Source: Antechinus flavipes (lineage: Eukaryota). Taken from it: DNA of 64,000 nt. Below are positions 24,871 through 64,000 of this stretch, in pieces. The notes under the pieces are model-generated. The model saw nothing but the letters and a program-made list of their open reading frames with translations. It was not told where the DNA came from and did not search any database. Where the stretch lies: the NCBI RefSeq assembly GCF_016432865.1, contig NC_067400.1, positions 612,870,001-612,934,000 of the forward strand, in the 5' to 3' direction. How positions within the stretch are numbered: position 1 is the first letter of the stretch; each line of letters starts with the position of its first letter. The translations under genes were made by a program, and so were the position numbers.

Positions 24871-24998
24871 AGCAGAAGCGCAAACGATCCTGGGTATCTC
24901 CAGATCGCACCTCACCCAGGAGGGAAGGAGGCTTCGCGCCGGAGGGCACAAAGGCTGGGAGGGAGCCCCTTTGTCCTCCACTTTAACCCCGATCCACA

Positions 24999-32384: not shown

Positions 32385-32945
32385 AAGCAGTGGTTCTGTT
32401 CTTGGACAATCTACTAGCACCATGGCCAGGAAACTAAATCACTTCCATTTGAAATGTCTTAGGAAGATTCTGAAGATCATCTGGCAGGACAAGACACTGA
32501 AGTCCTTTTTTGAAGTAAATTGTGAGTGTTCCAACTCTACTTCACAGAGCATGACTGTTGAGTTGATCACGTGGTTCAAATTTGCACTTGACAAAAAGGG
32601 CAAATGCTCACAAGGTAGTTAGAAAAAGCAATAAAAGGACAACCTCAAAGTCTCTCTTAAGAACTTTAGAATCAATTGCATGACATGGGAGATTCTGGCA
32701 CAAGATCCCTCAGCATGGCATGCTCTCATCAGAGAAGGTGCCATGCTCTATGAGCAAAGCAGAATTGAACAAACTCAGAAGAAACATGAGATATGCAAAG
32801 TTAGAGAAGCATACCATATGTCCATAGGGACTATTTGTGCCCAACCTCTGGCAGAGCATTCTGAGCTCATATTGGTCTGATCAGATACAGTCAAGTACAC
32901 TGTAACTGGACTCTAATATAGTGATGTCATTTTGGTCCTCTATGA
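32385..32945 (+). mobile_element. RTE-clade LINE 3' fragment
   Basis: Peptides ARKLNHFHLKCLRKILKIIWQDK and TWEILAQDPSAWHALIREGA are typical of RTE ORF C-termini. Confidence 0.8.
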
Positions 32946-41850: not shown

Positions 41851-42848
41851 CATTTGCAATGAATGCCAAAAATATTGAGAAATGTGGTTCAGGATTAAAG
41901 AATGACATAGTCCAAAAACTTATAGATTGCAAAGAAGTCTTATACTCAATGAATACTGTCTTAGAGGAAAGACCTGGAAGACACTGGTCATGGGAAGCAG
42001 CAAACAATATTTTTTTCCTCAACAAATTTTAAAGGGTTTTAATAGATCATTTTCAAAGTGAAGAATGCAAGCTATAAATGATCTATGAAAAAGTCCATAA
42101 TAAATTATTGTTATTGTTCAGGAATTTCACTAATGTACCCATTTCCGTGACCTCATTTGGTTTTTTTTTTTGTGTGTGTGTGATTTGACATTTCCTTCTC
42201 TAAATCATTTTACAAAAATGAGGAAACTGAAGCAAAGTGAAAGCAAACTCAAAGTTTCTGAGTCTTGATTTGAACTCAGGGCTTCCTGATGACTAATAAT
42301 TAGAAAAAATGCCAATTACAACTCTGAGGATAATCTCACAGTTTTCAGATTGATCTTCTTAAAGTTTTTTTTTAGGGAAAGTGATAATTAGGAAAAGATA
42401 ATTATAAATGTTAGAGGGAATGTGGGAAAACTGGAATACTAATACATTGTTGGTGGCATTGTGAACTGATACAGCCATTTTGAAAAGCAATGTGGAACTA
42501 TGCCCAAAGGGCTATCAAATTGTGCATACCCTTTGATCCAGCAGTCTCTTTACTAGGTCTATATTCCAAAGAAATCATAAAAGAGGGGAAAGGACCCAAA
42601 TGCAAAGATGTCTGTAGCAGCTTTTTTAATATAGTGGCAAGGAGATGCCCATCACTTGGGGAATGGCTGAATAAGTTATGGTATTGTATGTTAGGGAATA
42701 TTATTATTCTTTTTTTCTTTTCCTGAGGCAGTTGGGGTTAAGTGACTTGCCCAGGATCACATAGCTACGAAGTGTTAAATGTCTGAGGCCAAATATGAAC
42801 TCAGGTCTTCCTGACTTCAGGGCTGGTACTCTCTTCACTGCACCACCT

Positions 42849-44555
42849 CACTTGCAGAACAAAGACCCCTATGGTATTTACACACTAATTTGGTTCTTCC
42901 TCTTCCCCAATCAAAGCAATTGAAGATGGAGCATAAATTAAGGGGCGGGGGAGGGAGGGGCAGAAAACAGGGTAATGAGCGAAATGATTATTAAATAACA
43001 AGTTATGGCAGAGATTTCTGACTTTACCCAAAATTTGGGCTACCTATCCTGTCTTGGTGGAGTTGTTTCCCCATGCAAAACTTTTTTCCCCATAGAAAAA
43101 CTTTTCAAAGAGATTCTAGTCCCAAGAAATCCAATCTTCTGTGTTTTAATCTGCCAAAACTGAAAGGCAGACCCCCATTTGTCAAGATTGTCCTAGGCAG
43201 GGATAGTTTGAATAAGAGTAATGATCCCCCCCCCCCAAAAAAAATGGAGGAGCTGGGAATTGAGGCCAATTGGGGAAAGGAGGGAGCTTAGGATCAGAAG
43301 TCTCTATCCCTGGGCAGTCAAAAGGGAAGCTGACCATCCATGTAGAGTGAAGCCCCAGTCCCCACCCCGCTGCCATGGCCAAGAAACTGATGGGGGCAGA
43401 GGGACCTGAGGGAGAGTGAAAACAGACACCAGTTTAAAAAAGAAAAAAAAAATCCAACCTGAAACCTGACCATGGGAAACAGTTTTCTAGTCTCATAGAG
43501 ACATTGGTTAGCAACCTGCATAGCCCCCCAGGGTGTTCCCCCATTCCCTCATTAGAATAAGCCCACCTCTCATTATAACATTCATTCATCTCATTGTTAA
43601 CCTATCAGCTATTGCCATCCTTAAGAACAACTACCCTTCCAAGTACATATGAGCATTGACTGGGTTCCATGAAGAGTCGTTGGCACCCAGAAATGCCACT
43701 GACCCGAATGTCAAAGAACACTTTTAAATAATTAGCTGCTATATGTAAGTATGTGTATGGATGAATATATATGTCTATAGATAAATAAATCTGTGCATAA
43801 CAGTAGCCTACTTGGGAGAGATGGGGAAGAATGAAAGGGAGAAAAAAGAATAATGTAAAAAATGCACAGCAGAAAATAAAAGTATAACCTATAGGGAAGC
43901 AAAGATGAATACTCATGAAAATAATATTTTCTAGTATCATATATGTTTTCTCAAAGTGGAAATTCATTATTGTATATTTTGAATCTCTCTGATGTTCTGC
44001 TGGACACATAATTTTTTTTTTTGTTTTTTACTTTCTTTTTCTGTCCTTTTTCTATTCTGTTCTTTCTTATATTGTATTCAGGTCAATAAAAAAAGATCTG
44101 CTAGCAATAATCAAATTATTAATTACCCAGAAACTATATCTCTTGAACTTTTTATGTCATAGTAAGAAAGTAATAAGACATCAACAGAGTCAAAGTGTCT
44201 GTATCCTTTTATCTCTTTAGGAAGTGTGAAGTTTCTTTGATTAAATTGGACGCCATCAAGCAGTCTGCTTCTAAACAAATGGGCAAGTAAGCCAAAACAA
44301 AATGTGACCAAAAGAAAATCTATTCTGTCCAGCTTCTGAATTTAGATTAGAGGATTATAAAATATTAAAAACATTAAAATATGAAATCGTTGGTCTTCAC
44401 AGTGCTCAAAGTCCTCCAACCCTTCATCTGGATTTTAAGTTTATTAGTTGAAACAACCTCTTTTCTCTCAATTCATAAGACTATAGCCACATAGCAAGAA
44501 ATGTAGGAAAAAGAATTCAGTGTGCTTGCTTGGAATATTTTAACCCTAAATCTAT
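42849..44555 (+). repeat. Third, gene-less copy of the IFNL 3'-flank duplicon
   Basis: 42849-43230 matches 52464-52840 and 60999-61380; 43538-43760 matches 61395-61615; 43865-44270 matches 53045-54550 (less an L1 insert); 44280-44555 matches 63673-64000. Confidence 0.85.
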
Positions 44556-46635
44556 CCCCAAATTTTCTTTTCCTTGCCTTATTGCCAATTTTAAAATTAC
44601 AGCTTTTTATTGACAAAACAAATGCGTGGGTAATTTTTCAACTCTGACTCTTGCAAAAACTTCTGTTCCAACTGTTCCTTTCCTTCTTTCCACTCCTCTC
44701 CTAGATGGCAGATAGTCCCATATATGTTAAATATATTAAAGTATATGTTAAATACAATATATGTATTCATATTTATATAGATGTCTTGCTACACAAGAAA
44801 AATCAGATTTAGAAAGAGGGTAAAAATAACCTGGGAAGAAAAATAAAAATGCAAGCAAACAACAACAGAAAAAATATAAATGCTATGTTGTGGTCCACAT
44901 TCCTTTCCCAGTGTTCTTTAGCTGAGTGTAGCTGGTTCTGTTCATTACTGATCAATTGGAACTGATTTGGCTCATCTCATTGTTGAAGATGGCCACTTCC
45001 ATCACAATTGATCCTCTTATAGTATTGTTGTTGAAGTGTATAATGATCTCCTGGTTCTGCTCACATCACTTAGTATCAGTTCATATAAGTCTCTCCAAGA
45101 CTCTCGGGAATCATCCTGCTGGTTATTTCTTATAGAACAATAATATTCCATAACATTCATATACCACAATTCACCCAGCTGTTCTCCAAATGATGGGCAT
45201 CCATTAAATTTCCAGTTCTAGCCACTACAAAAAGGGCTGCTACAAACATTTTTGCACATACAGATCCCTTTCCCTCCTTTCAGATCTCTTTGGGATATAA
45301 GGCCAGTAGTAACACTGCTGGATCAAAGGGTATGTGTTATGAGCTAGAACTCTGTACTTGAAACCAGGATTCCTACAAGGTGCTAACTCAGTGGAATTGA
45401 TAAGAGAATGGTTATCTTGTTTAGCATGGTGTTTAATAGTTCTCTAGTTCAGTATGATTGATTTAATCTTACCACAAATAATGGTTCTCTAGTGATATAA
45501 TGATTGTTTTATATTCAGTATATTGTAAATGACCTAATTATACTAGAGTATATAAGCTGGGATAAACTTAGCCAGAGGCAGACTCGGAAAAGACAGAGGA
45601 CTGGAGGCTGGAGCTCAGGCTCTCCCAGAGAGATTCACTCCATCTCACACCACCAGGTGGCTGGCCTCCTGCATTTCCTCCACTGAGACCAAGCTAGTGT
45701 TGGCCCCAGGCAAGGACGTGATAAAGAATTTGGACTTCAACACCTGGCTATTCTTGTGGTGATTAATCTGCTGAAATGGAGGCTGCTCCAAGACCTCCAG
45801 AAAACCAACCAGAACATTACAGGTATGCACAGTTTAACAACTTTTTGAGCATAGTTCCAAATTGCTCTCCAGAATGGTTGGATCCATTCACAATTCCACC
45901 AACAATGCATCAGTGTCCCAGTTTCCCCATATCCTCTCCAATATTCATCACTATCTTTTCCTGTCATGTTAGCCAATCTGAGAGGTATATAGTGGTATCT
46001 TAGAGTTTTCTTAATATGCATTTCTCTGATCAATAATAATTTGGAACATCTTTTCATATGGGTAGAAATAGTTTCAATTTCATCATCTGAAAATTGTTCA
46101 TATCCTTTGATTTCTCAATTTGATTTCTCAATTGGAGAATGGCTTGATTTCTTATAAATTTGAGTCAATTCTCTATATGTTTTGGAAATGAGACCTTTAT
46201 CAGAACCTTTAACTGTAAAGATGTTTTCCCAATTTATTGCTTCGCTTCTAATCTTGTCTGCATTAGTTCTATTTGTATAAAAACTTTTTAACTTGATATA
46301 ATCAAAATTTTCTGTTTTATGATCAATAATGATCTCTAGTTCTTCTTTGGTCACAAATTCCTTCCTCCTCCACAGGTCTGAGAAGTAAACTATCCTATGT
46401 TCTAATTTATTTGTAATCTCATTCTTTATGCCTAGATCATGAACCCATTTTGATCTTATCTTGGTGTATGGTGTTAAATATAGGTCACTGTCTAGTTTCT
46501 GCCATACTGATTTTTAATTTTTCCAGAAGTTTTTGTCAAATAGTACATTCTTATCCCAAAAGTTGGGGGTTTTGGGTTTGTCAAACACTAGAGTGCTATA
46601 GTTATTGACTATTTTGTCCTGTGAACCTAACCTAT
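44555..46635 (-). mobile_element. L1 3' portion interrupted by a solo LTR
   Basis: L1 3'UTR/ORF2 sequence continuous across the LTR insertion (GATCAAAGGGTATG|...|GGTATGCACAGTTT). Confidence 0.85.
45335..45821 (+). mobile_element. Solo LTR, 487 bp, 6-bp TSD (class II/ERV2-like)
   Basis: Starts TG, ends CA; TSD GGTATG at 45329-45334 and 45822-45827; TATATAAG ~45550; CTCF-like CCACCAGGTGGC 45650-45661. Confidence 0.9.
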
Positions 46636-47241
46636 ATAGCAAATCCCTACAACCTGCCCTACTCCCCACATCTTCAAAGGGTAACAGGAAATCTCTTTTG
46701 AGATTAAAGGGGAACACAAGGGAGAAAATGTATTTTAGGCAAAAACAACAGAATCTCCTTTCCTTTCTCTAATGTTAGGCTTGCCTTCTTGTCATGGAGC
46801 ACTAATTGAACAAGATATTATCCCATAGCACTGTATTGATGTTTGCCCACACTCATGGGCATGTTATTGGTGAGCAATGCACCTCCCTCTTTTCCATCCT
46901 CAAACAATAAAACCCAAAAGCACTCTGTGGGGCACAGGTTAAATCTTTTCACTATCGAGGATAGTAGAGTATATCTGGTTTCTAACAGCATAGTCCCAGA
47001 TGTGCTAAGAAAGGAAATGGAAATAACACAGAAGAAAACAGAGATGTAGGCTAGAGGCAACCCAATCATAAAGATGTTGAGAGGATCTTCCCAGAGTATG
47101 TGAAACCAAGGGAGGGGAGATTTTTAAAAATCTCAGAAAACCTCTTAGAACATATCATTACAATCAAAAGAAGACATCAATCATTACCAACTCATAGGAG
47201 GCTTCCTTTCCTATCTATTTAAATATTTTATGAGAATATTT

Positions 47242-49780: not shown

Positions 49781-50046
49781 GAAAGAAAGAAAGAGACGGA
49801 GGAAGCTAAGAGTAAAAGAGGATTGGAGGGGGAAAAGGGAGAGATGCGGGGGAGGAAGAGTGCTGGCATAGAGATCCAAGGGATAAAGAAGGGGAGAAAA
49901 AAGGGGGGTTTGGGGCAGGAACAGGATGGAGGTCTGAAAGGGGGAGATGAGCCGGAAAGAGGCCACGAGGAGGGAAGGTGTGCCCCATCCGGGGCGAGTG
50001 CAGGAGCTGCTGCTTTTGTGGAACCACTGGCTACATGACCTTGCTC

Positions 50047-50177
50047 TTTCAGTTTCCCTTTCCTGGTACCCGCTCTTTTTCATGCAGACACCTGCCTCGC
50101 CCCTTCCGCTGAGGGATTTTTGGAATCTGTTTCCATTTTTTACGCATCTGTGGAATCTCCGGCTGGGCCGCTTAAAA
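50047..50177 (+). promoter_or_regulatory. IFNL copy A promoter: triple IRF/ISRE, broken kB site, TATA-like box
   Basis: TTTCAGTTTCCCTTTCC 50047-50063 (contains the AGTTTCNNTTTCC ISRE consensus); TGGAATCTCC 50151-50160; TTAAAA 50172-50177. Confidence 0.75.
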
Positions 50178-50231
50178 GTGCAGGGATGAAGCCGTCTCCT
50201 GAGACACTTGCCACCTCACTTCTCCAAGGCC

Positions 50232-51616
50232 ATGATGCTTCCTCAGGCTCTCCCGCTACTGCTTTCTGCCCTGATGTCAGGGACGATTTCGAAGTCCCTG
50301 GCCCCGACTCTCAGTAATCTTCCCCCCGAGAGGAGCTGCCAGATCAGCCACTTCAAGTTTCTTTCACCTCGGGAGATGGAAACTTTCAAGGTGGCCAAGG
50401 ATGCCTACGTAAGTTCCTGGCGGGCTTTTTGTACTCCTGCCCTCGCACTTCCCGGGGGTCTAACTTCGATCTCTTTTACTGTGCTCCAATACTCATCTCT
50501 TGCACTTAGGTCTAATCTTCATCCTTCCTTCTTGAGCTCTGTCCTTTTCTCTGTTTCTAACCTCCATCTTACATCGCAAGGACCTAGAAGGGTCACAAGC
50601 CTTTAATGTCTTCCTCTTCATCCCCTCAAGGAGAAGACCATGCTTCAGACGGAGAGGAAATGTAGCTCCAGATTCTTCCACAGAAGCTGGGACCTTCGGC
50701 AGCTGCAGGTAAGAAGGGGCGCTCCCCACCTGTCAGTCGCACATCACCTTTCTCCAAAATCTGTCGTATCCCCATTTCTTTTCCCCAATCTCCTCTCACC
50801 TGTCAGTCCCTCATCACCTTTCTCCAAAATCTGTCGCATCCCTATTTCTCTCCCCCTTCTGTCGGTGCTCCCCCGTCTCTTCCCCTGTCCCCTTCATCAG
50901 CCTCTCCCTCACAACGCCTCTCATCTCTCCCCTCACAGCTGTCAGTTCGGCCCGTGGTCTTACAGGCTGAGCTGAAATTGACTCTGGAGGTCTTGAAAGC
51001 CGTAACCAAGCCGGAGTTGGACAGCGTTCTGGCTCAGCCCCTACAAACGCTCAGCCACATCCACCAAGAGATCCAAAGCTGTGTGAGTACCGGAGGGTGG
51101 GCGGGGCTCCCCTGGACCAATGGGCATGGAGCTGTTCCCTGTCTCTCAGGTGCCTGGGTCCCTTGCAGTGAGGCTGAGGGGATGCAATACCTGGAATCTC
51201 CTCCTCCCCCTGCCACATCCATCAAATGCCTGGGTCCCCTTCCTTTTATTAAGTCCACCCTCTCCCTACACAGGTTACTTCCAGGCTCTCTAAAGAACAC
51301 AGGCCTCCAGGCCGCCTGAATAATTGGTTGAACAAGCTCAGTGAGGCTAGAAAGGTGAGTTAGAAAAGCTTCAGATCTACTGATGGCACCGGGGGATGGA
51401 AAGGAGGAGTCAGAGGGGACCCCAGAGTCTGGGCAGCAAGAGACTCTGTCTCCCTCTGAGGGAGGAACAAGGATTCAGGATTCCCCAGAGAACCCTTATC
51501 CCTGTGTCTCTTCTTTTTAGGAGGCTCACAATTGCCTAGAAGCATCCATTATGCTCAATCTCTTAGGAATCCTGACCAGAGACCTCCGATGTGTAGCCTC
51601 TGGGGACCTATGTTGA
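50232..51616 (+). CDS. Interferon lambda, IFNL3-like, copy A, 191 aa
   Basis: join(50232-50408,50631-50708,50939-51082,51274-51354,51521-51616), all phase 0 GT-AG. MMLPQALPLLLSALMSG...SCQISHFKFLSPREMETFKVAKDAY/EKTMLQTERKCSSRFFHRSWDLRQLQ/LSVRPVVLQAELKLTLEVL...HQEIQSC/VTSRLSKEHRPPGRLNNWLNKLSEARK/EAHNCLEASIMLNLLGILTRDLRCVASGDLC*. Six Cys, consistent with the three-disulfide IFN-lambda2/3 pattern. One-to-one orthology to human IFNL1/2/3 is not resolvable. Confidence 0.95.
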
Positions 51617-51659
51617 AGATTCAGACCCACCCTGAGATCTCAGAGTGGACTTTTGCACT

Positions 51660-51783
51660 CCAAACTTTATTTATGGACCAACACCCTTCTAATTTATTTA
51701 CTCCATGCCCAACACTCACATACTTTATATGCCAGAGGACAGTTTTATACTTTTGTATTTGTTTCTATATTTTGTTAAATAAA
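51660..51783 (+). terminator. Copy A 3'UTR AU-rich elements and poly(A) signal
   Basis: ATTTA motifs ~51668 and ATTTATTTA ~51692-51700; AATAAA 51778-51783 followed by a long GT-rich tract. Confidence 0.75.
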
Positions 51784-53239
51784 TAAGAAAACGCAAAAAT
51801 ATTGAAATCTTCTCTGTCATTTTGTAGTTGTTTTCTGTGTGACTGTGGCTATAAGCAAGTGTGGTTGTGTGTTTCTATGTGTAGTTGTGAGAAGGTGAGA
51901 TTGAGGATTTGTGAGCACAGTTGTGGGTTTGTGTGTGTAATTGTAGATCTGTGTTTAACTGTAAACAGGTAGGGTTGTGGATTTTGAATGCAATTATGGG
52001 TTTGTGTATATGGTCAGAGGGCTTTGTGTGGTTGTGAGCAGGTGGGATTGAGACTGTCTATGTGTGTGTGTAGTTGTAGGTTTGTGTATGGCTGTGAGCT
52101 GGTGGGATTATGGGTTTGTATGTGTGGGTATAAGTGGGACTGTAGGATGTGTGCATTGACCTGGATATCCGTGTGGCTGCAGTCTGGGTCTCCTTTGACC
52201 TCGCTTGTGGGCTCCACTTTGCTGGGAAGGTAGTACCTGGGCTGGAAAATTAGATTGCATTTAATAGGGACTCTAGTCAATCAATCCTGCCTGACTCTGA
52301 GTGAGCCCCTTGGACATAGGTGATAGGGACCAGGAATCAGTGTACCCTCTTAGCGGAGCCAGCTGGATGCTGGGCTTGGGAGACCATTAGACATAAAGAG
52401 ATTTCTTGATTCAGCGTCCTCCCTTGAGAAAGAAGACAGTCCATGGAATTTGTGCATCTTGCCTCACTTGAAGAACAAAGACCCTATGGCATTTACACAC
52501 AAATTTGCTTTTTCCTCTTCCTCAATCAGAGCAATTGAAGATGGAGCATAAAATAAGGGGGGATGGGGCAGAAAACAGAGTAATGATCGAAATGATGATT
52601 AAATAACAAATTATTGCAGAGATTTCTGACCTTACCCAAAATTTGGGCTACCTATCCTGTCTAGGGGGAGCTGTTTGCCCATTCAAGTAGGAAAACCTTT
52701 CCAAGAGATTCTAGTCCCAAGAAATGAAGTCTTCTGTGTTTTAGCCTGCCAAGACTGAGGAGAGGCAGGCAGAACCCTTTTGTCAAGACTGCCCTAGGTA
52801 GGGATAGTTTGGATAACAGTAAAATCCCTTTGTCTAAGACTGAGTTATCCAATCAAGTTCCCCCATTCTCTTATTAGAATAAGCCCACCTCTCATATAAT
52901 ATTCATTCTCATTAACCTATCAGAGTTATTGCCATCCTTAAGAACAACTACTCTTCCAAGTATATGTATGAGCATTTAATTATGCCAATTGAAAAAGTCT
53001 TACCAGGTCTCTTCTCCCTTTCTTTCCCCACAGGAAGTAGAGGGAGAATAAAAGTGTAACCTATATGGAAGCAAAGATAAACTCTCATGAATATATTTTC
53101 TATTGTTATATATGTTTCTCGAAATGAAAATTTATTATATTTTGAATCTCTCAGATGTTCTGCTGGGCACATGATAATGTTTTTCCTTTTTACTTTCCTT
53201 TTTTCTCCTTTTCCTTTTTTTATGTTAAAATACATAATA

Positions 53240-54340
53240 AATCCTATATATATATATATATACATACACATATTTATACAGTTATCTTGTTGCACAAGTA
53301 AAATTAGATCAAGAAGGAGGAAAAAGAAAAACTGAGCAAGAAAACAAAATGCAAGCTAATAACAACAGAGAGAGTGAAAATGCTATGTTGTGGTCCACAC
53401 TTTGTTCCCACAATCCTCTCTCTAGTGTAGATGGATCTCTATAACACTGAACAAGCAGAACTGATTTGAATCATCTCATTGTTGAAGAGAGCCATGTCCA
53501 TCAGAATTGATCATCATATAGTCTTCTTGTTGCCATGTATAATGACCTCCTGGTTCTGCTCTTTTCACTCAGCATCAGTTCCTGTAAGTTTCTCCAGACC
53601 TCTCTGAAATCATCCTGCTGATCGTTTCTTATAGAACAATAGTATTCCATAAAATTCATATACCACAGTTTATTCAGCCATTCTCCAATTGATGGGCATT
53701 CACTCAATTTCCAGTTTCCTGCCACTATAAAGAGGGCTGCCACAAACATTTTTCCACATGTGGGTCCTTTTCCCTCTTTTAAGATCTTTTTTTTTTTAAG
53801 CATATAAGCCCAGTAATAACATTGCTTGATAAAAGGATATGCACAGTTTGATAACTTTTTGACCAGAGTTCCTAATTGCTCTCCAGAATGGTTGGATTTG
53901 TTCACAGTTCCAACAACACTGTATTAGTGTCCCAGTTTTCCCAGAGCCCCTCCAACATTCTTCATTATCTTTTCCTGTCATCTTGGCCAATCTAAGAGGT
54001 GTGTAGAGTTATCTCAGTGTTCTCTTAATTTGCTTTTCTCTAATCAATAGTGATTTGGAGCATCTTTTCCTGTGACTGCAAATAGTTTCAATTTCTTCAT
54101 CTGAGAATTGTCTATTCATATCCTTTGGCCATTTATCACTTGAACAACGGCTTGAACTATCATAAATTTGACTCAATTCTCTCTATATTTTAGAAATGAG
54201 GCCTTTGTCATATCCTTTGGATATAAAAATGTTTTCCCAGTTTATTGCTTCCCTTCTAATCTTGTCTGCATTCTTTTTAACATAATATAGTAAAAATTAT
54301 TTATTTTGTGATCAATGATGATCTCTAATTCTTTGGTCTT
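53240..54340 (-). mobile_element. L1 3' fragment inserted in the copy-A flank
   Basis: Minus-strand peptide MFVAALFIVAGNWKLSECPSIGEWLNKLWY; absent from the colinear copy at 43865-44270. Confidence 0.85.
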
Positions 54341-54681
54341 CTATCCTCTTTCTATTTTGTTTTTTTCTTATTTTGTACTCAGGGCAATAAAAAAGATCTG
54401 CTAGCAATAATCAAATTATTAATTACCCAGACGCTAAGTCTCTTGAACTTTTTATGTCATAATAAGAAGGTAATAAGACATCAACAGAGTAAAAGTGGTT
54501 GTATCCCTTTATCTCTTTCGGAAATATGAAAGGTCTCTGATTGAATTGGAAGGGGATCCAGGCATTGGGTACTTGAAAATTGGTCATGATTTTGGTGTCT
54601 CTGAGAAGACAAGCCTGCTGCATTGGATGAGAGATAAGCAGTTCTAGGAAAAGATTTGATTCCCAGTTTTGTGAATCATAG

Positions 54682-54694
54682 CACTTTCACTTCT
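54682..54694 (-). promoter_or_regulatory. PRDI-like IRF/PRDM1 element
   Basis: Minus strand reads AGAAGTGAAAGTG, matching the IFN-beta PRDI core as recalled. Confidence 0.45.
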
Positions 54695-55139
54695 ACCAGA
54701 GGAAAGGACAGGGCCATAGTGGAGGTGATGATTAATTTTTTTCCCTCCCCCCACCATCAAGCCATGATGTTTTGCAGAGGCACTATTAATACAGGAGGGT
54801 GTGCCGTAACCAATTCAAAATCTGGGTTAGCCCACAACTTCCTGGATTTCTTCTGGACTCAGTCTGTCTTCCACCATGAAATGGCCTTTTTCACTCTGTA
54901 AATGTCTCACAGTTAGTCAATAAGCATTTATTAAATGCCTACTACATTTCAGGCATTAAACCCTAGAAATTAAAAAGTAAAAGGTAAGGAACAATCATCT
55001 CTGATGGATGAATTCATCCCTGAATCTGTTTTTCAGGAAACACCAGTGCCAACAAGCTGATTTTATTTATTTGTTTTTAATAGTATTTTATTTTTTCCAA
55101 ATACATGCAAAGGTAGTTTTTAAAAATTAAAACATTTTA

Positions 55140-56600
55140 TTTTCCCCAAAGGGATCTTAAAGGAGGGAAAGGACCCACAGGTACCAAAATGTGTGTAGCA
55201 GCCCTTTTAGTAGTAGCAAAAAACTGGAGACTGAATGGATGCAATCAGTTGCAGAATGGCTGAATAAGTTATGGGATATGAGTGTTATGGAATATTATTG
55301 TTCTTTAAGAAATGCCCAGCAGGATGATTTCAAAGAGATCTGGAGAGACGTATGATGCTGAGTGAGGTGAGTAGAATTAGGAGATCATTTTATAGGACAA
55401 AAATGAGATTTTACAATGATCAATTCTGATGGACGTGGCTCTCTTCATCAACGAGATGACTCAGACCAGTTCCAATGATCTTGTGATGAAGAGAACCATC
55501 TGCGCTCTGAGAGAAGACTGTGTAGGAACTGAGTGTGGAACACAACATAGTATTTTGACTCTTTTTGTAACTGTTTGCTTGCATTTTATTTTCTTTCTTA
55601 ATTTTGTTCCTTTTTGATTTGATTTTTCTTGTGTGTGCAGCAAAGTAATTGTATAAGTATGTGTGCATATATTGGATTTAACGTATATCTTACCATGTTT
55701 AACATATATTAGATTACTTGCTATCTGGAGGAGGGGATGGAGGGAGAAGGGGAAAAATTGAAACACAAGATGTTTCAAGGGTTAATGTTGAAAAATAATC
55801 CATGCATATATTTTGAAATTTAAAAAGCTTTAATAAAAAACTTTTTATTTTCAAAATATATGCACATCTTTTCAACAATGAAGTAATTTGGGCCAGTTCC
55901 CATGATCTTGTGATAAAGAGAGCCATTTGTACTCAGAAAGAGGACTGTGGGAATTGAGTGTGGATCATAACATAGTGTTTTCCCTCTTTTTGTTGTCATT
56001 TGCTTGCATTTTGTTTTCTTTCTCATTCTTTTCCTTTTTGATCTGGTTTTTCTTGTGCAGTATGATCATTGTGGAAATAAGTAAAGAAAAATTAGACATG
56101 TTTAACATATATTGGATTGCTTGCTATCTAGGGGAAGGGGTAAGGAAAAGAAAGGGAAAAATATCTGAACATGAGTTTTTGCAAGGGTAAATGTTGAAAA
56201 TCATCTATGCATATGTTTTGGAAATAAAAAGCTTTAATAACAAAAGAAAATAATTAAAAGCATACATGCATAATTAGTTTTAATATTCACCCTTATAAAA
56301 TGCAAAGATAGCTTTCAACATTCACCTCTGTAAAATGTTGTCCAAATTTTACTTCTTGTCTTCCTCTCTACCCCCACCCCAAGAGAGTAAGCAATCTGAT
56401 ACAGGTTAAACATGAGCAATTCTTCTAAACGTATTTCCATATTTGTCATGCTATGCAAGAAAAAACAGATAACAAGGTAAAAAAAACTTGAGAAAAAATA
56501 AGCAAACAAACAATAACAATAATAAAAAGATGAAAATACTATGCTTCCTTCCATATTCAGTCTCCATAGTTCTCTCTCTGGATGCACATGACATTTTCCA
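55140..56600. mobile_element. Cluster of L1 3' fragments in both orientations
   Basis: Repeated L1 3'UTR motifs (GAGAGAAGACTGT...CAACATAGT...TTGCTTGCATTTT). Confidence 0.7.
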
Positions 56601-56859
56601 TCGCAAGTCTATCGGAACTGCCTGGATGCAAATCCCCAGTTCTTTCCAGATCTCTTAGTTGGAATACCTCCTGCCCACATTTTAATATACCTGGAGGAAA
56701 GAAGGAAAACTGTCAGTGGAAAACAAAGCAAGGGGAAGGGAGGAATGTATAGTAAGTCTAGAAAGGGAAGTAAACACTAGGTTAGGAAAGCCTTCAAACA
56801 AAGGATTTTTAAAAATTATAACTTTTTATTGACAGTACAAATGCATGGGTAATTTTTTA

Positions 56860-57488
56860 AAAAATTTTTATTTAATGATTACTTTATATTGACAACATTA
56901 TCCCTTGCACTCGTTTCTTTTCCGATTTTTTTTCCCTCCCTCCCTCCACCCCCTCCCCTAGATGGCAAGCAGTCCTTTATATGTTGGATATGTTGCAGTA
57001 TATCCTAGATACAATATATGTTTGCAGAACTGAACAGTTCTCTTGTTGCGCAGGGAAAATTGGTTTCAGAAGGTATAAATAACCCGGGAAGAAAAACAAA
57101 AATGCAGATAGTTCACATTCGTTTCCCAGTGTTGGTTCTTTGGGTGTAGCTGCTTTTGTCCGTCATTTATCAATTGAAACTTAGTTAGGTCTCTTTGTCA
57201 AAGAAATCCACTTCCATCAAAATATGTCCTCATACAATATCGTTGTCGAAGTGTATAATGATCTCCTGGTTCTGCTCATTTCACTTAGCATCAGTTCATG
57301 TAAGTCTCGCCAGTCCTCTCTGTATTCATCCTGCTGGTCATTTCTTACAGAACAATAATATTCCATAACATTCATATACCACAATTTGCCCAGCCATTCT
57401 CCAATTGATGGGCATCCATTCATTTTCCAGTTTCTAGCCACTACAAATAGGGCTGCTACAAACATTTTGGCACATACAGGTCCCTTTC
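56860..57488 (-). mobile_element. Young truncated L1 with 17-bp TSD
   Basis: GCATGGGTAATTTTTTA at 56843-56859 and 57489-57505; ORF2-tail peptide MRKGPVCAKMFVAALFVVARNWKMNGCPSIGEWLGKLWY. Confidence 0.9.
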
Positions 57489-57924
57489 GCATGGGTAATT
57501 TTTTACAACATTATCCCTTGCACTCACTTCAAGGTCCTCAAAGGTCCTCCTTTGATCCTGGAGGTAACAGGAAACCTCAGGTTCATTGTCCTCGTGCATA
57601 TTTTTTCCTTGATTCTCTTGTTTTAATCTGCCTCCATTCACTTAAATTGTCCCATGCTTTTCTATACTTATTATATTCATTGTTCTTATATAGCACTTAT
57701 AGTCCATTACATTCATGTACCACGTTATATTTAGCCATTCCATGATCAATGGAGAGGGACAATTGATAGAATACTTTGTTTGGAATCAGGAAGACTCATC
57801 ATAAATTCATTTTAAATAGCTACTGGATTTGTGACATCGAGCAACTCATTTACCTTGTTTGCCTTTGTTCATCTATAAAATGATCTGGAAAAGGAAATGA
57901 CAAACCGAGATCTTCACCAAGAAA

Positions 57925-58704
57925 AAAGCCCAAAATAGCATCAGAGAGAGTCAGAATGAAACAATTCAACAACAGTCAATGGACATTTATTTTGTTTCCA
58001 GTTTTTTCTACTTAAAAAAAAAGTTAAAAGTACCTAGATGGTACAGTGGTTAAAGTATGGGTCTTGGAGTCAGGACTTGAGTTCAAATGTGACCAGACAC
58101 TTAAGACTTCCTACCTGTGTGAACCTGGGCAAGTCACTTAACTCTAACTTCATGCAAAAAAAAATGTAATATTTTGGTGTATATAGATCCTTATTTCATA
58201 TCAATGAGCTTTCTGGGGTATAGGTCTAGCAATAGAATCTGGGTCAAAGAGCATGGACTAAAAGCTAAAAATCTTCTTCATTTGCATAAGACATAATTGC
58301 TTATTTAAATGCTTGTATTAATTCACAACTCCACCAACAATGCATTTATGTACTATACAGTACTTGTCCAAAAACTGACTTTTTCCAGTTTTTGTCATCG
58401 TTGACAATTCCCTGGTGAGGAGGTAAAACTTCAGAGATGTGTTGATTTGCCTTCCACTTATTAGTGATTTGAGGCATTTTCTTATGTGATTGTATTCGTT
58501 TGTAATTTTTCTTTTGAGAACTGGTCACAGTTCTAACAACTTTTGACCGCGAAATTGGGAATTGGGAATTGTCTATTAAAGTTAAGTTCACTAGAGGGGC
58601 CTTTGGTGAGCACAATCCATAGGCAGTTTTGTGAATCTGATGTAGTAGCCACTTCCTTCTCCACTCCCCAACCTTTATCCCCAGCCAGAGATTCATCCCG
58701 GTAC
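57925..58704 (+). repeat. Direct repeat X1 (~0.8 kb) upstream of IFNL copy B
   Basis: Colinear with 61624-62438 (SINE + old L1 + unique tail ending CCCCAGCCAGAGATTCATCC); offset ~3.7 kb. Confidence 0.92.
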
Positions 58705-58781
58705 CCGCCCTTTCAAGGTAAGAACCTTGCAGACACACCTGGCCCCGTCCGAGCCTTTCGCAGCGAGATTTTACGAATCTC

Positions 58782-58829
58782 TTTCCATTTTTCATACATC
58801 AGGGGAATCTCCGGCTTGGCCGCTTAAAA
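58782..58829 (+). promoter_or_regulatory. IFNL copy B promoter: IRF-like site, perfect kB site, TATA-like box
   Basis: TTTCCATTTTTC 58782-58793; GGGAATCTCC 58803-58812 fits GGGRNWYYCC; TTAAAA 58824-58829. Confidence 0.75.
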
Positions 58830-58883
58830 GTGCGGGGATGAAGCGGTCTCCTGAGACACTTGCAGCCTCATCTCTCCAAGGCC

Positions 58884-60214
58884 ATGATGCTTCGGCAGGC
58901 TCTCCCCTTGCTGCTTTCTGCCCTGATGTCAGGGGCGATGTCGAAGTCCCTGGCCCCGACTCCCAACAGCCTTCCCCCCGAGAGGAGCTGCCAGATGAGC
59001 CAGTTCAAGTCTCTTTCGCCTCGGGAGCTGGAAGCCTTCAAGGTGGCCCAGAATGCCTACGTAAGTTCCTGGAGGGCTTTTTGTACTCCACTCCTGCCAC
59101 CTCCCACTTCCCGGGAAAGGGGTGGGGGACGGGGGTGGGGTCTAACCTCGATCTCTTTTACTGTGCTCCAATACTCATCTCTGGCACTTAGGTCTAACGT
59201 TGATCCTTCCTTCTTGAGCTCTGTCCCTTTCTGTGTTTCTAACCTCCGTCCTACATCGCAAGGACCTAGAAGGGTCACAAGCCTTTAACGTCTTCCTCTT
59301 CATCCCCTCAAGGAGAAGACCATGCTTCAAACGGAGAGGAAATGTAGCTCCAGATTCTTCCACAGAAACTGGGACCTTCGGCAGCTGCCGGTAAGAAGGG
59401 GCGCTCCCCACCTGTCAGTCCCATATCACCTTTCTCCAAAATCTGTCGCATCTCCATTTCGCCCTTCTGTCGGTCCTCCCCCCGTCTCTTCCCCTGTCCC
59501 CTTCATCAGCCTCTCCCTCACAACGCCTCTCATCTCTCCCCTCACAGCTGTCAGTTCGGCCAGTGCTCTTAGAGGCTGAGCTGAAATTGACTCTGGAGGT
59601 CTTGAAAGCCGTAACCAAGCCGGAGTTGGACAGCGTTCTGGCTCAGCCCCTACAAACGCTCAGCCACATCCACCAAGAGATCCAAAGCTGTGTGAGTACC
59701 GGAGGGTGGGCGGGGCTTCCCTGGACCAATGGGTATGGAGCTGTTCCCTGTCTCTCAGGTGCCTGGTTCCTTTGCAGTGAGGCTGAGAGACTGCAATACC
59801 TGGATCTCTCCTCCCCCCACCCATCAAACGCCTGGGTTCCCTGCGCTTTTATCAAGTCCACTCTCTCCCTACACAGGTGACTTCCCAGCCCTCTAAAGAA
59901 CACAGGCTTCCAGGACGCCTGAAGAATTGGCTGAACAAATTCAGTGAGGCCAGAAAGGTAAGTTAGAAAAGCTTCAGATCTGCAACTAGCACCTGGGGAT
60001 CCAAGGGAGGAGTCAGAGGGGACCCCAGAGTCTGGGCAGCAAGAGACTCTGTCTCCCTCTGAGGGACTCAGGATTCCCCGGAGGACACTTACCCCTGTGT
60101 CTATTCTCTTCTCTTCAGGAGCCTCACAATTGCCTCGAAGCATCCATCATGCTCAATCTCTTCCGACTCTTGCTCCAAGACCTCCGATGTGTAGCCTATG
60201 GGGACCTATGTTGA
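58884..60214 (+). CDS. Interferon lambda, IFNL3-like, copy B, 191 aa
   Basis: join(58884-59060,59313-59390,59548-59691,59877-59957,60119-60214), all phase 0 GT-AG. ...SCQMSQFKSLSPRELEAFKVAQNAY/EKTMLQTERKCSSRFFHRNWDLRQLP/LSVRPVLLEAELKLTLEVL...QSC/VTSQPSKEHRLPGRLKNWLNKFSEARK/EPHNCLEASIMLNLFRLLLQDLRCVAYGDLC*. Confidence 0.95.
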
Positions 60215-61623
60215 AGTTCCAGACCCAGCTTGAGGTCTGAGACTGAACTTTTGCACTCCAAATATTATTTATGGAACAACACCCTTCTAATTTATTCATT
60301 CCCTCCACCCCTAACACTCACATACTTTATATGCCAGAGGATAGTTTTGTACTTTTGTATTTTTTCTATATTTTGTTAAATAAATAAGAAAACACACAAA
60401 AAATATTGAAAGCTCGTCTGTCGTTTTGTAGTTGTTTTCTGTGTGACTGTTTGTGGCTTTAAGCAAGTGTGGTTGTGGGTTTTTGTGTGTGGCTCTGAGC
60501 AGGTGAGTTTGTGGATTTGTAGGTTTGTGTGTGCAATTGTAGATCTGTATGTGGCTGTGAACAGGTAGGGTTATGAATGTGTGAATGCAATTGTGGGTTT
60601 GTGTATATAGTCAGAGGGCTGTGTATGGCTGTGAGCTGGTGGGATTGTGGGTTTGTATGTGTGGGTATAAGTGGGACTGTAGGATGTGTGCGTTGACCTG
60701 GATCTCCGTGTGGCTGCAGTCCGGGTCTCCTTTGACCTCGCTTGTGGGCTCCACTTTGCTGGGAAGGTAGTACCTGGGCTGGAAAATTAGATTGCATTTA
60801 ATAGGGACTCTAGTCGACCAATCCTGCCTGACTCTGAGTGAGCCCCTTGGACATAGGTGATAGGGACCAGGAATCAGTGTACCCTCTTAGCGGAGCCAGC
60901 TGGATGCTGGGCTTGGGAGACCATCAGACATAAAGAGATTTCTTGATTCAGCGTCCTCCCTTGAGAAAGAAGACAGTCCATGGAATTTGTGCATCTTGCC
61001 TCACTTGAAGAACAAAGACCCTATGGCATTTACACACAAATTTGCTTCTTCCTCTTCCTCAATCAGAGCAACTGAAGATGGAACATAAAATAAAGGGGGA
61101 TGGGGCAGAAAACAGAGTAATGATCGAAATGATGATTAAATAACAAATTATTGCAGAGATTTCTGACCTTACCCAAAATTTGGGCTACCTATCCTGTCTA
61201 GGGGGAGCTGTTTGCCCATTCAAGTAGGAAAACCTTTCCAAGAGATTCTAGTCCCAAGAAATGAAGTCTTCTGTGTTTTAGCCTGCTGAGACTGAGGAGA
61301 GGCAGAACCCTTTTGTCAAGACTGCCCTAGGTAGGGGTAGTTTGGATAAGAGTAAAGTCTCTTTGTCTAAGACTGAGTGATCCAATCAAATTCCCCCATT
61401 CCCTCATTAAGAGAAGCCCACCTCTCATTATAATATTCATTCTTCTCATGAATTTTTAAGCTATCGGTTAGTGCCATCCTTAGGAACAACTCTGATTCCC
61501 AAGTGTATATAAGCATTGACTGGCTTCCATGAGGAGTCTTTGGCACCCAGAAATGCCACTGATCCAAATGTCAAAGACCACTTTTAAATAATTAGGCTGC
61601 TATATGTATGTATGTGTGAAAAA

Positions 61624-62438
61624 AGAATCCAAAATAGGGGTCACAGAGAGTCAGGCAGGAATGAAACAATTCAACAAGAGTCAATGGACATTTCTTTTGT
61701 TTCCAGTTTTTTCTACTAGAAAAAAATATATGTTAAAATTAGCTAGATGGTACAGTGGTTAAAGTATGGGCCTTGAAGTCAGGAGGATCTGAGTTCAAAT
61801 GTGATCAGACACTTAAGACTTCCTAGCTATGTGAACCTGGGCAAGTCACTTAACCCTTACTTCCTCATGCAAAAAAAAAGGTGTAATATTATATATAGAT
61901 ATATAGATTCTTATTTCATATCAATGAGCTCTCTGGGGTATATGTCTAGCAATAGAATCTGGGTCAAAGAGCATGGACTAAAAGCTAAAAATCTTCTTCA
62001 TTTGCATAAGACATAATTGCTTTTTTAAATGATTGTACTAATTCACAACTCCACCAACAATGCATTTATGTACTATCCAGTACTTGTCCAAAAACTGACT
62101 TTTTCCAGTTTTTGTCATCTTTGACAATTCTCTGGGGAGGAAGTAAAACCTCAGAGTTGTTTTGATTTGCCTTCCACTTATCAGTGATTTGAGGTATTTT
62201 CTTATGTGATTGTATTCGTTTGTAATTTTTCTTCTGAGAACTGCTCACTATTCTAACAACTTTTGACCATGTTTCTGTTGGGAACTGTCTATTAAAGTTA
62301 CGTTCACTGGAGGGACCTTTGTTGAAGCATAATCCATAGGCAGGTCTGTGAATCTGATGTAGTAGTCACTTCCTTCTGCACCCCGCCCCCCCACCCCACC
62401 CCCTACCTTTATCCCCAGCCAGAGATTCATCCTGATAC
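61624..62438 (+). repeat. Direct repeat X2 (~0.8 kb) downstream of IFNL copy B
   Basis: Second copy of 57925-58704; not followed by IFNL sequence. Confidence 0.92.
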
Positions 62439-64000
62439 CTGCAATACCAAATTAGGAAGACTCAACTAAAGAAGTGTAGGTCTCAGAGAAAGGAGATTAC
62501 TGTGGAATTTTTGTTTTCTGGGAAGGGTATCTACGCAACAGGGTAGTAGCACAAGTCTTGAGGAGATTGGGGGGCCCTGAAAACAACATCAAATACAGTT
62601 CTTTTTCATTGAGAAGTAATGGATTTTTCTCTTTCTGTTTTGGTTTATTCACTTTTACATCTTTAGCATCTTAGGTGTGTTTTCTACATGATTAAATACA
62701 AGTTTCCTCATCCCTAAAGTTCATACTATACATTAAATATCTGTATGAGTTGGGGGCTCTCTTACCTACATTTAGAGAAACTGAGTCATGCGCTATGGTT
62801 TATTTTGGAGTTTTTCCTGCATTAATTGCAGGTGTGTTTGGGGGGAAGATGAAAGAAAAGAAACTGACTTCTTTGGATTCCTTCAGATTAGGAATATTTC
62901 CTGTGAGTTTATAATTTTCATGGGGCAGTGAGGAAGAGGTTCCCAAGTTGTGAATACACATGAAGAGTAAATTATTTAAGATGAGGGAAAAAATATGCTG
63001 AACAATCAAAGCAGTGTTGCCCATTTGAAAGAGTTATTGACATCCCCAAATAGAAAATGGATGGGCGAACAGATATTGACCCAGATAATAAAAGTTTCTA
63101 GAGAAGTTTAGCCTGTGTAAATCAAAGGACTCTATAAGCCACTTGAGTCAGCAAATGTCTGATCTATTTGCCAAGTGGAGAGATGTGGTAGCTAAGGGCA
63201 GTACCAATTTTACAATATAAAACGGTAAGTTGGTAAGGAAGAATTTGAGCAGTATCAACTCAGGAAACAGCGAGAAGCAGAGAAATTTGGAGAAAGCTTG
63301 GCAGGATCTTGGCAACTAAAAACATTCATCATGAGGACATTTAAAGATGAAAGTGGAAATAACAAAAGATTAAAGTCCAGAAAGAGAAGTAAATATTTTC
63401 ATGTAACACCTGTGGACAGTGTGTGACACTTGGTGAGTACTCCATGTGTCAACTGGTCCACAGCAGCTGTGTAAGAAGTCTATGTCATCGATTTTCGTGT
63501 CATCATCTTGAAACCCACAGGAAATCAGTATTCCTTGATTCAGTGGGGGGCTGGGGGGGGGAGGGAGAGGACAGCATATTTGAACTGTCCCCCAGATGGT
63601 GCTATAGATTCAAGTCACCAACCAAGTGGTCTCATCAGGGTCTCTGGCACCAAACCTCCCTCACCCCACCAAGCAGTCTGGCTCTAAACAAATGCGCAAG
63701 TAAGCCAAAACAAAACTTGATCAAAAGAAAATCTATTCTGACCAGGTTCTGAATGCAGATTAGAGGGTTATGAAATATTAAAAACATTAAAATGTGAAAT
63801 CATTGGTCTCCACAGAACTCAAAGTCCCCCAACGCTTCATCTGGTCTTTATCCGTTGAAACAACCTCTTTTCTCTCAATTCATAAGGCTATAGCCACATA
63901 AGAAAAAATGTAGGAAAAAGGGTTCAGTGTGCTTGCTTGGAGTATTTTTAATCCCAAACTTATCACCAAACTTCCTTTTCCTTGCCTTATTGCCATTTTT

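What the first reader, a model, noticed from the sequence alone, without database searches (positions are those of the whole stretch)
50040..58830. Two IFN-lambda paralogues partition the IRF/ISRE and NF-kB promoter elements
Seen: A and B promoters are homologous only from CC(T/C)GGTACCCGC (A ~50062, B ~58697) onward. Just 5' of that point A carries three tandem GAAA cores (50047-50063, a consensus ISRE), which B lacks because its upstream is the unrelated X1 repeat. Conversely B has a perfect kB site GGGAATCTCC (58803-58812) and GAAAAATGGAAA, while A has TGGAATCTCC (50151-50160) and has lost the first G of that proximal IRF-like site. Known: human IFNL1 is induced mainly by IRF3+NF-kB and IFNL2/3 more by IRF7. 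Inference: this marsupial may have independently evolved an early kB-driven and a late/feedback IRF-ISGF3-driven lambda pair, with the duplication breakpoint itself removing the ISRE.
Basis: partly seen in the sequence, partly recalled or inferred. Interest (0 to 1): 0.82.

Follow-up and report, generated by a model that had tools for sequence, protein, structure and literature searches.

The report
Interferon-lambda array with copy-specific promoter lesions
The promoter differences between the two marsupial interferon-lambda genes are real, but they are recent copy-specific damage in a five-gene tandem array that inherited one conserved promoter, so a designed early/late division of labour is not shown.

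Summary
The framing is incomplete.

- **Source and array.** The window is Antechinus flavipes chromosome CM028219.1. It cuts through a tandem array of five IFN-lambda genes (A and B in the window, then C, D and E, then SYCN).
- **Ancestral promoter.** The order is distal triple-GAAA ISRE, E-box/GC box, proximal IRF site, kB site, TATA. It is shared with Sminthopsis, Sarcophilus, koala and Dromiciops. The proximal half matches bank vole in position, and matches the human IFNL3 sites called IRFb and NF-kBb.
- **B.** It lacks the ISRE because about 4.2 kb of spacer, including the distal promoter, is missing. The conserved intergenic segment X1 is joined to the promoter at a TCC microhomology.
- **A.** Its kB G-to-T and three nearby changes are A-specific substitutions in an otherwise unchanged block.
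- **Other copies.** C encodes exactly B's protein and keeps a distal IRF element. E keeps every element, but its gene is broken. All five sampled Sminthopsis and Sarcophilus copies keep both modules.

B still has the proximal IRF site and A still has its 10-nt core, so the partition is not clean. A functional split between the A and B/C/D lineages remains possible but is untested.

The parts
49793..50046 (+). Region U: the distal promoter/upstream segment of gene A. It is homologous to the upstream of copies C, D and E and of the Sminthopsis, Sarcophilus, koala and Dromiciops genes. It is absent upstream of B.
   Evidence: blastn of L001/L002 against the window; 12-sequence alignment A3.
50047..50062 (-). 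Distal IRF element / consensus ISRE GAAAGGGAAACTGAAA (three GAAA cores). It corresponds to the IRFa-type site of eutherian IFNL2/3 promoters.
   Evidence: motif statistics. The 18-nt core CTTTCAGTTTCCCTTTCC is identical in A, E, koala and Dromiciops, and is the longest three-way identical run in the promoter alignment. The best match to the human IRFa sequence quoted in PMC7611124 is GTTTCCCTTT, with one mismatch.
50089..50104 (+). Conserved CACCTG / GGCCCCGCCCC block (E-box plus GC box). In A it is degraded by a 1-nt deletion and a C-to-T change.
   Evidence: Alignments A3 and A4. The same CACCTG...GGCCCCGCCC is present in the bank vole promoter.
50129..50141 (-). Proximal IRF site of A, GTTTCCATTTTTT on the plus strand. 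It is the IRFb equivalent, 43 nt upstream of the TATA box. The last base is an A-specific C-to-T change; the 10-mer AAAATGGAAA is intact.
50151..50160 (+). kB-like site of A, TGGAATCTCC. Position 1 is an A-specific G-to-T change. The site lies 21 nt upstream of the TATA box.
50172..50178 (+). TATA box TTAAAAG of gene A.
50232..51616 (+). Gene A: five phase-0 exons (50232-50408, 50631-50708, 50939-51082, 51274-51354, 51521-51616), 191 aa, intact.
   Evidence: gene model; Pfam IL28A on exons 1, 3 and 5.
57942..58698 (+). X1 of unit A: a conserved intergenic segment, 90% identical to X1' at 61644-62432. It now abuts B's promoter.
   Evidence: A homologous segment lies downstream of Sarcophilus copy 3.
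58696..58698 (.). Rearrangement junction. X1 ...GAGATTCATCC is joined to the promoter CGGTACCCGC... at a TCC microhomology. The native continuations TGATACCTGC and CGGTACCCGC match at 7 of 10 bases.
   Evidence: Three-way alignment A2; motif positions.
58781..58793 (-). Proximal IRF site of B, CTTTCCATTTTTC on the plus strand (IRFb equivalent), 43 nt upstream of the TATA box.
58803..58812 (+). Consensus kB site GGGAATCTCC of B. It has the same offset from the TATA box (21 nt) as the vole site GGGGCTGCCC, which is the NF-kBb equivalent.
58824..58830 (+). TATA box TTAAAAG of gene B.
58884..60214 (+). Gene B: five phase-0 exons (58884-59060, 59313-59390, 59548-59691, 59877-59957, 60119-60214), 191 aa, intact. 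Its protein is identical to that of copy C.
61644..62432 (+). X1' of unit B. It continues into native spacer Z (62433 onward) and then, beyond the window, into region U and the promoter of copy C.

Best explanation
A and B are the first two genes of a five-copy tandem IFN-lambda array (A, B, C, D, E, then SYCN and an NCCRP1-like gene) in Antechinus flavipes.

All copies descend from one promoter that is conserved across australidelphian marsupials. Its proximal half is also conserved with a rodent. The order is: distal triple-GAAA IRF element/ISRE about 120-150 nt upstream of the TATA box; an E-box/GC box; a proximal IRF site 43 nt upstream; a kB site 21 nt upstream; TATA.

Each Antechinus copy carries its own recent lesion:
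- **B** lost the whole distal part. About 4.2 kb (spacer Z plus region U) is missing between the end of unit A's X1 segment and the promoter, joined at a TCC microhomology.
- **A** acquired four substitutions inside the otherwise unchanged proximal block, including kB G1-to-T.
- **C and D** have two substitutions in the distal element.
- **E** keeps every element, but has an LTR-element insertion in intron 1 and a 1-nt deletion in exon 4.

Inferred consequences, by analogy with mapped human IFNL3 sites: B should stay inducible through the proximal IRF plus kB pair, but lose any boost or feedback input from the distal element. A should keep IRF/ISRE input and have a weaker p50/p65 response. The pattern is birth-and-death turnover of a tandem cytokine array rather than an organised two-gene partition.
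For: - **Identity of the locus.** L001 1-6199 equals window 57802-64000 at 100%.
- **Extra copies.** C, D and E were found and modelled. B and C proteins are identical, and D differs at 2 residues. SYCN follows E.
- **Unit similarity.** B-C 98.6%, B-D 97.8% and C-D 98.5% over 7.9 kb. A-B is about 87%.
- **Unit order.** The order gene-D-X1-Z-U-promoter is collinear in Sarcophilus. It is largely collinear in Sminthopsis and koala.
- **Junction.** X1-like on the left, C-type promoter on the right.
- **Conservation.** In the 12-promoter alignment the distal block is present in every copy except B, and GGGAATCTCC is present in every dasyurid copy except A. The 18-nt ISRE core is identical in A, E, koala and Dromiciops, against 63% overall identity.
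- **A-specific changes.** Derived changes fall at 50141, 50144, 50149 and 50151. That is 4 of 25 core columns against 28 of 565 intron columns; the BCD, Sarcophilus and Sminthopsis lineages have 0 of 21.
- **Eutherian comparison.** The vole promoter has IRFb-like and NF-kBb-like sites 45 and 21 nt upstream of TATA. The marsupial sites sit 43 and 21 nt upstream.
- **Human site sequences and their reporter phenotypes.** PMC7611124.
Against: - There are no expression, binding or reporter data for any marsupial IFNL promoter, so all functional consequences are inferred.
- A deletion cannot be formally separated from a complex duplication or template-switch junction.
- The array holds 98-99% identical 7.9-kb units, and the assembly could not be checked against reads.
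- The Fisher test on A's core (p = 0.04) is post hoc.
- Only the two or three copies nearest SYCN were sampled in Sminthopsis and Sarcophilus. An A-type orthologue with the same lesion could exist further upstream in those species.
- At lineage level, A (proximal lesion) and B/C/D (distal lesions) do show complementary changes, which fits the rival reading.
Confidence: 0.65

Rival explanations
1. Regulatory subfunctionalisation. The old A lineage has become an ISRE/IRF-driven, feedback-type lambda gene. The B/C/D lineage has become an early gene driven by the proximal IRF and kB sites. B's deletion is the extreme of a trend already visible in C and D.
For: - The lesions are complementary and fall in ancestral, conserved elements.
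- A and BCD are old lineages. A is as far from B as from the Sarcophilus or Sminthopsis copies.
- The promoter is the most diverged segment between A and B (81.5%), while exons 2-3 and intron 2 are 96-98% identical and a 500-nt stretch of the 3' flank is 96-100% identical.
- The only copy with a complete promoter (E) is broken.
- Human IFNL1 and IFNL2/3 differ in NF-kB versus IRF7 dependence (PMC4288562).
Against: - B, C and D all keep the proximal IRF site. C and D keep a canonical distal GAAACGGAAA.
- A keeps AAAATGGAAA and a GGAA half site.
- In human IFNL3 reporters, mutating the distal IRFa site did not reduce activity (PMC7611124).
- All five sampled Sminthopsis and Sarcophilus copies keep both modules.
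- A's coding sequence cannot be distinguished from neutral change (14 non-synonymous to 8 synonymous).
- There are no functional data.
Confidence: 0.15
2. Gene A is decaying. Its promoter and coding changes reflect loss of constraint in a redundant copy, on the way to becoming a pseudogene, not a new regulatory role.
For: - A has the longest terminal branch in the tree (0.063).
- It has four derived changes in a block that is unchanged in the other dasyurid copies compared, plus damage to the GC box.
- It has 14 non-synonymous to 8 synonymous derived changes, including F175L/R176G/L177I and Y187S.
- Three near-identical intact sister genes exist.
Against: - The reading frame and all splice sites are intact.
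- The perfect ISRE has been retained unchanged since the split from koala and Dromiciops.
- The ratio of about 0.5 is compatible with weak purifying selection.
Confidence: 0.15
3. The X1-promoter junction upstream of B is an assembly artefact in a highly repetitive array.
For: Units B, C and D are 98-99% identical over 7.9 kb, which is a hard target for assembly. No read-level check was possible.
Against: - The left side of the junction is unit A's X1, which is about 10% diverged from the other X1 copies and so is effectively unique.
- The junction has the microhomology signature of a real rearrangement.
- No gaps or N runs lie nearby.
Confidence: 0.05

Closest known systems
Human IFNL3 (IL28B) proximal promoter with IRFa, NF-kBa, IRFb and NF-kBb sites (Lee et al. 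2014 as cited in PMC4126180; PMC7611124)
   Same: The order distal IRF, proximal IRF, kB, TATA is the same. The marsupial proximal IRF site (GTTTCCA[C/T]TTTTC) differs from human IRFb (GTTTTCACTTTTC) at one or two bases in Sminthopsis and Sarcophilus. The distal GTTTCCCTTT differs from IRFa (GTTTCTCTTT) at one base. Offsets from TATA equal those in bank vole.
   Different: The marsupial distal site is a perfect triple-GAAA ISRE. The NF-kBa position is not a consensus kB site in dasyurids. The kB site sequence differs (GGGAATCTCC versus GGGACTGCCC). No marsupial site has been tested for binding.
Differential control of human IFNL1 versus IFNL2/3 (NF-kB is an extra requirement for IL-29; IRF-3/7 are key for IL-28A/B; PMC4288562)
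   Same: Paralogous lambda genes in one cluster differ in promoter content of IRF and NF-kB sites.
   Different: In humans the difference is experimentally shown. Here it rests on one deletion and a few substitutions in a five-copy array, with near-identical sister copies that lack the lesion.
Duplication-degeneration-complementation model of duplicate-gene preservation (Force et al. 1999; from my own knowledge)
   Same: Opposite degenerative lesions lie in ancestral cis-elements of two duplicates.
   Different: More than two copies exist. The copy redundant with B (C) retains the element, so neither lesion is needed to explain why the genes are preserved.
Marsupial-specific IFNL duplication reported in the Tasmanian devil (two IFNL genes; PMC4662006)
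   Same: Dasyurid IFNL genes cluster by species or lineage and are not one-to-one orthologues of eutherian IFNL1-3 (tree).
   Different: Current assemblies show more copies: at least 3 in the Sarcophilus locus fetched and 5 in Antechinus. Promoters were not analysed in that paper.

Membership tests
Type III interferon (IFN-lambda) gene | Protein matches the IL28A family (Pfam PF15177) | tested here: met
   Exons 1, 3 and 5 of both A and B each exceed the gathering score. The closest proteins are named interferon lambda in dasyurids.
Type III interferon (IFN-lambda) gene | Five-exon structure with no codon split by an intron | tested here: met
   Exon lengths are 177, 78, 144, 81 and 96 nt, all in phase 0, with GT-AG introns. 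This is the same feature PMC2654155 describes for IFNL1.
Type III interferon (IFN-lambda) gene | Synteny with SYCN and NCCRP1 | tested here: met
   Syncollin and an FBA-domain gene follow the last IFNL copy in Antechinus, Sminthopsis, koala and Dromiciops.
Virus-inducible IFNL promoter (IRF plus NF-kB module) | IRF-binding elements (GAAANNGAAA type) upstream of the TATA box | tested here: met
   A and E have two overlapping GAAANNGAAA matches plus the proximal AAAATGGAAA. C and D have one plus the proximal site. B has only the proximal site.
Virus-inducible IFNL promoter (IRF plus NF-kB module) | Consensus kB site GGGRNWYYCC close to the proximal IRF site | tested here: met
   Met in B, C, D and E, in all Sminthopsis and Sarcophilus copies, and in koala. 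Not met in A (TGGAATCTCC) or Dromiciops.
Virus-inducible IFNL promoter (IRF plus NF-kB module) | Binding of IRF3/IRF7/p65 and induction by virus or poly(I:C) | not testable with these tools
   No marsupial expression or ChIP data were available. The devil transcriptomes showed no interferon expression (PMC4662006).
ISGF3-type ISRE | Sequence RNGAAANNGAAACT | tested here: met
   A reads AGGAAAGGGAAACT on the minus strand, and E has the same sequence. It is not met in B (absent), C and D (GAGAGGGAAACG), Sarcophilus or Sminthopsis.
ISGF3-type ISRE | Induction of the gene by interferon through STAT1-STAT2-IRF9 | not testable with these tools
   Needs IFN-treated marsupial cells.
Subfunctionalised duplicate pair (DDC) | Both lost elements were present in the ancestor | tested here: met
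   Outgroup copies carry both the distal block and the kB site.
Subfunctionalised duplicate pair (DDC) | The two copies are jointly required because no other copy retains the full set | tested here: not met
   C encodes the same protein as B and keeps a distal IRF element together with the proximal IRF and kB sites. D does the same with two residue differences.
Subfunctionalised duplicate pair (DDC) | Complementary expression patterns | not testable with these tools
   No copy-resolved expression data.

The most novel reading that the evidence does not exclude
In Antechinus no intact IFN-lambda gene keeps the full ancestral promoter. The old A lineage keeps the perfect ISRE but has a damaged proximal kB/GC module. 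The B/C/D lineage keeps the proximal IRF-kB pair but has a degraded (C, D) or deleted (B) distal element. The only complete promoter drives a broken gene (E). This could be a true, lineage-specific split into an IFN/IRF-feedback lambda gene and a primary virus- and NF-kB-induced lambda gene family. It would have arisen independently of the eutherian IFNL1 versus IFNL2/3 split. B versus C would serve as a natural deletion experiment on identical coding sequences.
Probability: 0.15. Interest if true: 0.6.

Novelty: new member of a known kind. Interest (0 to 1): 0.35.

Why it matters
Three things follow.

- **Conservation.** Together with the bank vole promoter and published human site sequences, the data show that the proximal IFN-lambda promoter has kept its order and spacing since marsupials and placentals split. 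That part runs from the proximal IRF site through the kB site to the TATA box. The distal IRF/ISRE element has been kept letter for letter within australidelphian marsupials. This gives the human IRFa, IRFb and NF-kBb sites an evolutionary footprint.
- **A natural allelic series.** Antechinus carries four promoter states: full promoter, distal element weakened, distal element deleted, and kB weakened. Three of these sit in front of identical or nearly identical proteins. This makes the long-unclear role of the distal IRF/ISRE element directly testable.
- **Antechinus biology (from my own knowledge).** The genus is known for stress-driven immune collapse in males, so its interferon repertoire has some biological interest.

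The finding does not show a new kind of regulatory system.

Tried and rejected
**Steps that returned nothing**
- DNA for bilby, Gracilinanus, tammar, Petaurus and Monodelphis IFNL loci could not be fetched because the sample files were too large. American opossum outgroups are therefore missing.
- A literature search for the IL-8-type site TGGAATTTCC gave nothing useful. The statement that T-GGAA sites can still bind RelA rests on my own knowledge.
- A word search of earlier scan notes was blank.

**Ideas considered and rejected**
- *The extra CAAGGTAAGAAC in B came from X1'.* It is shared by C and D, so it is a feature of the B/C/D promoter type.
- *X1 brings replacement IRF or kB sites to B.* No match was found in 800 nt upstream of B.
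- *C's and D's upstream regions are recent copies of E's, which would allow an old junction.* Rejected because U of C and D differs from U of E at many positions.
- *A simple two-copy tandem duplication made the junction.* Rejected because B is 98-99% like C and D but about 87% like A, and because the X1-Z-U-promoter order is conserved elsewhere.

No position weight matrices were available offline. Motif calls therefore rest on IUPAC consensus patterns plus conservation.


Full report
**1. What is in the window**

Two intact IFN-lambda genes lie on the plus strand.
- A has exons at 50232-50408, 50631-50708, 50939-51082, 51274-51354 and 51521-51616.
- B has exons at 58884-59060, 59313-59390, 59548-59691, 59877-59957 and 60119-60214.
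- Each has five phase-0 exons and encodes 191 aa. The two proteins are 85% identical. Exons 1, 3 and 5 of both match Pfam IL28A above threshold.
- Between A and B, dS is 0.16 and dN is 0.07.

**2. The observation**

- Promoter homology begins at CCTGGTACCCGC (50062) in A and CCCGGTACCCGC (58697) in B.
- Immediately 5' of it, A has GAAAGGGAAACTGAAA on the minus strand (50047-50062).
- GAAANNGAAACT occurs four times in 64 kb, against 0.34 expected. The other three lie at homologous positions of one repeated element.
- The triple-GAAA pattern occurs twice, against 0.02 expected.
- B has GGGAATCTCC (58803-58812), and A has TGGAATCTCC (50151-50160).
- The kB consensus is not enriched in the window (21 found, 28 expected). 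It matters only because of where it sits and how it is conserved.

**3. The window cuts an array**

A 48-residue exon search led to dasyurid IFNL proteins and then to their loci.
- L001 1-6199 is 100% identical to window 57802-64000. The window is therefore Antechinus flavipes GCA_016432865.2, CM028219.1.
- Beyond base 64000 lie three more copies. Their start codons are at window-equivalent positions 66805 (C), 74696 (D) and 82558 (E). SYCN and an FBA-domain gene follow.
- C encodes exactly B's protein, and D differs at two residues.
- Units B, C and D are 97.8-98.6% identical over 7.9 kb.
- E has all five exons, but it carries a 6.06-kb insertion in intron 1 with 100% identical 300-nt terminal direct repeats. 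It also has a 1-nt deletion in exon 4 relative to A and B. As assembled, it is probably a pseudogene.

**4. The ancestral promoter**

I aligned twelve marsupial promoters: Antechinus A-E, Sminthopsis x2, Sarcophilus x3, koala and Dromiciops.
- The distal block CTTTCAGTTTCCCTTTCC is identical in A, E, koala and Dromiciops. It is the longest three-way identical run in the alignment; the TATA box, at 6 nt, is the next longest. Overall identity is only 63%.
- The distal block varies slightly elsewhere. Sminthopsis has one change and Sarcophilus has two. C and D have two changes (GAGAGGGAAACGGAAAG), which still gives one canonical GAAANNGAAA.
- The proximal block TTTCCATTTTTCATACATCAG-GGGAATCTCC is almost unchanged in the dasyurid copies apart from A.
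- A bank vole IFNL2-like promoter shows the same order: an IRFa-like site, CACCTG/GC box, a kBa-like site, GTTTTCGCTTTTC followed by TACATCAG, GGGGCTGCCC, and TTAAAAG.
- Searching with the human IFNL3 site sequences printed in PMC7611124 places IRFb 45 nt upstream of TATA in vole and 43 nt upstream in dasyurids. It places NF-kBb 21 nt upstream of TATA in vole, and the best NF-kBb-like match in B and C (GGGAATCTCC, three mismatches) sits at the same 21-nt offset.
- In that paper IRFb was essential for IRF7-driven activity, and NF-kBb was the most important p65 site. Mutation of IRFa did not reduce activity.

**5. How B lost the ISRE**

- B's upstream (57942-58698, X1) is 90% identical to X1' at 61644-62432.
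- A three-way alignment shows B following X1' up to ...GAGATTCATCC and following the promoter from CGGTACCCGC onward. TCC is shared at the join.
- B's promoter is of the C/D type, including the CAAGGTAAGAAC insert.
- The order gene-D-X1-Z-U-promoter is collinear in Sarcophilus. It is largely collinear in Sminthopsis and koala.
- In the B-C spacer, 4187 nt separate the two junction partners.
- The A-B spacer therefore lacks about 4.2 kb (Z plus U), although it has separately gained about 4.9 kb of repeats at 53000-57900.
- The most economical reading is a microhomology-mediated deletion that removed everything upstream of about 187 nt before B's ATG. A complex duplication junction cannot be excluded.

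**6. A's changes are derived**

- Using the other dasyurid copies to set the direction of change, A has changes at 50141, 50144, 50149 and 50151. That is 4 of 25 core columns, against 28 of 565 intron columns (one-sided Fisher p = 0.04, post hoc).
- The BCD, Sarcophilus and Sminthopsis lineages have none in 21 columns.
- A's GC box is also damaged.
- A nevertheless keeps AAAATGGAAA and a GGAA half site.
- A is an old lineage. It forms an unresolved three-way split with BCD and the Sarcophilus clade. It is as distant from B as from the copies in other species.
- Its derived coding changes are 14 non-synonymous to 8 synonymous. This is compatible with weak constraint or none.

**7. Reading**

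The conclusion of an evolved early/late pair does not follow from this evidence.
- B has two near-twins with a distal IRF element.
- B retains the proximal IRF site, which is the critical one in human IFNL3.
- The other dasyurid copies sampled show no asymmetry.
- There are no functional data.

A lineage-level version of the idea (A versus B/C/D) remains open at about 15%.

**8. Limits**

- There is no read-level check of the assembly.
- Opossum sequence was not retrievable.
- Only the copies nearest SYCN were sampled in other dasyurids.
- Motif calls use consensus patterns, not matrices.

Noticed in passing
window 24790-25170: A more distant IFN-lambda-like gene on the plus strand; an earlier scan note calls it IFNL4. 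Its first exon lies at about 24999-25165, and it gives a weak tblastn match to B residues 30-59. Its own promoter has an IRF-type run, TTTTCCTTTTTCCCTTTCCC, at 24802-24821, followed by GCTAAAAGATAAAA. No consensus kB site lies nearby.
   Followed up: partly
L007 44-6109 (window-equivalent about 82890-88955): A 6.06-kb insertion in intron 1 of copy E with 100% identical terminal direct repeats of at least 300 nt. It looks like a very young LTR element. E also has a 1-nt deletion (CCC to CC) at the start of exon 4, which shifts the reading frame.
   Followed up: partly
L001/L002 (protein P0046): The NCBI model 'interferon lambda-3 isoform X5' of Antechinus has coding pieces about 8 kb apart, in different array copies. 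It appears to be a chimeric gene model, which explains why neither A nor B matches it exactly (94% and 91%).
   Followed up: partly
window 50593-51092 and 52074-52774: Stretches where A and B are 94-100% identical sit among segments at 83-90%. The first stretch (end of intron 1 to exon 3) is also slow-evolving between species. The second (3' flank) could be a gene-conversion tract.
   Followed up: partly
window 42846-44592 and 46638-47112: Upstream of A lies a gene-less stretch homologous to the downstream/spacer part of the repeat unit (D and Z segments). The koala locus shows the same collinear sequence upstream of its single gene.
   Followed up: partly
window 41193, 46070, 54084: Three copies of a repeated element (LINE-like by position) each carry GAAA[C/T]TGAAACT, a perfect ISRE-type match, on the minus strand.
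   Followed up: no
window 22635-23122: A tandem array with a 49-nt period, about 10 copies, about 95% identical.
   Followed up: no
ext2 32624-34877 (downstream of copy E; L007 about 7580-9830): The GT-rich segment found once downstream of A and B (window 60484-60652) is expanded into a long array with a period of about 62 nt between E and SYCN.
   Followed up: no
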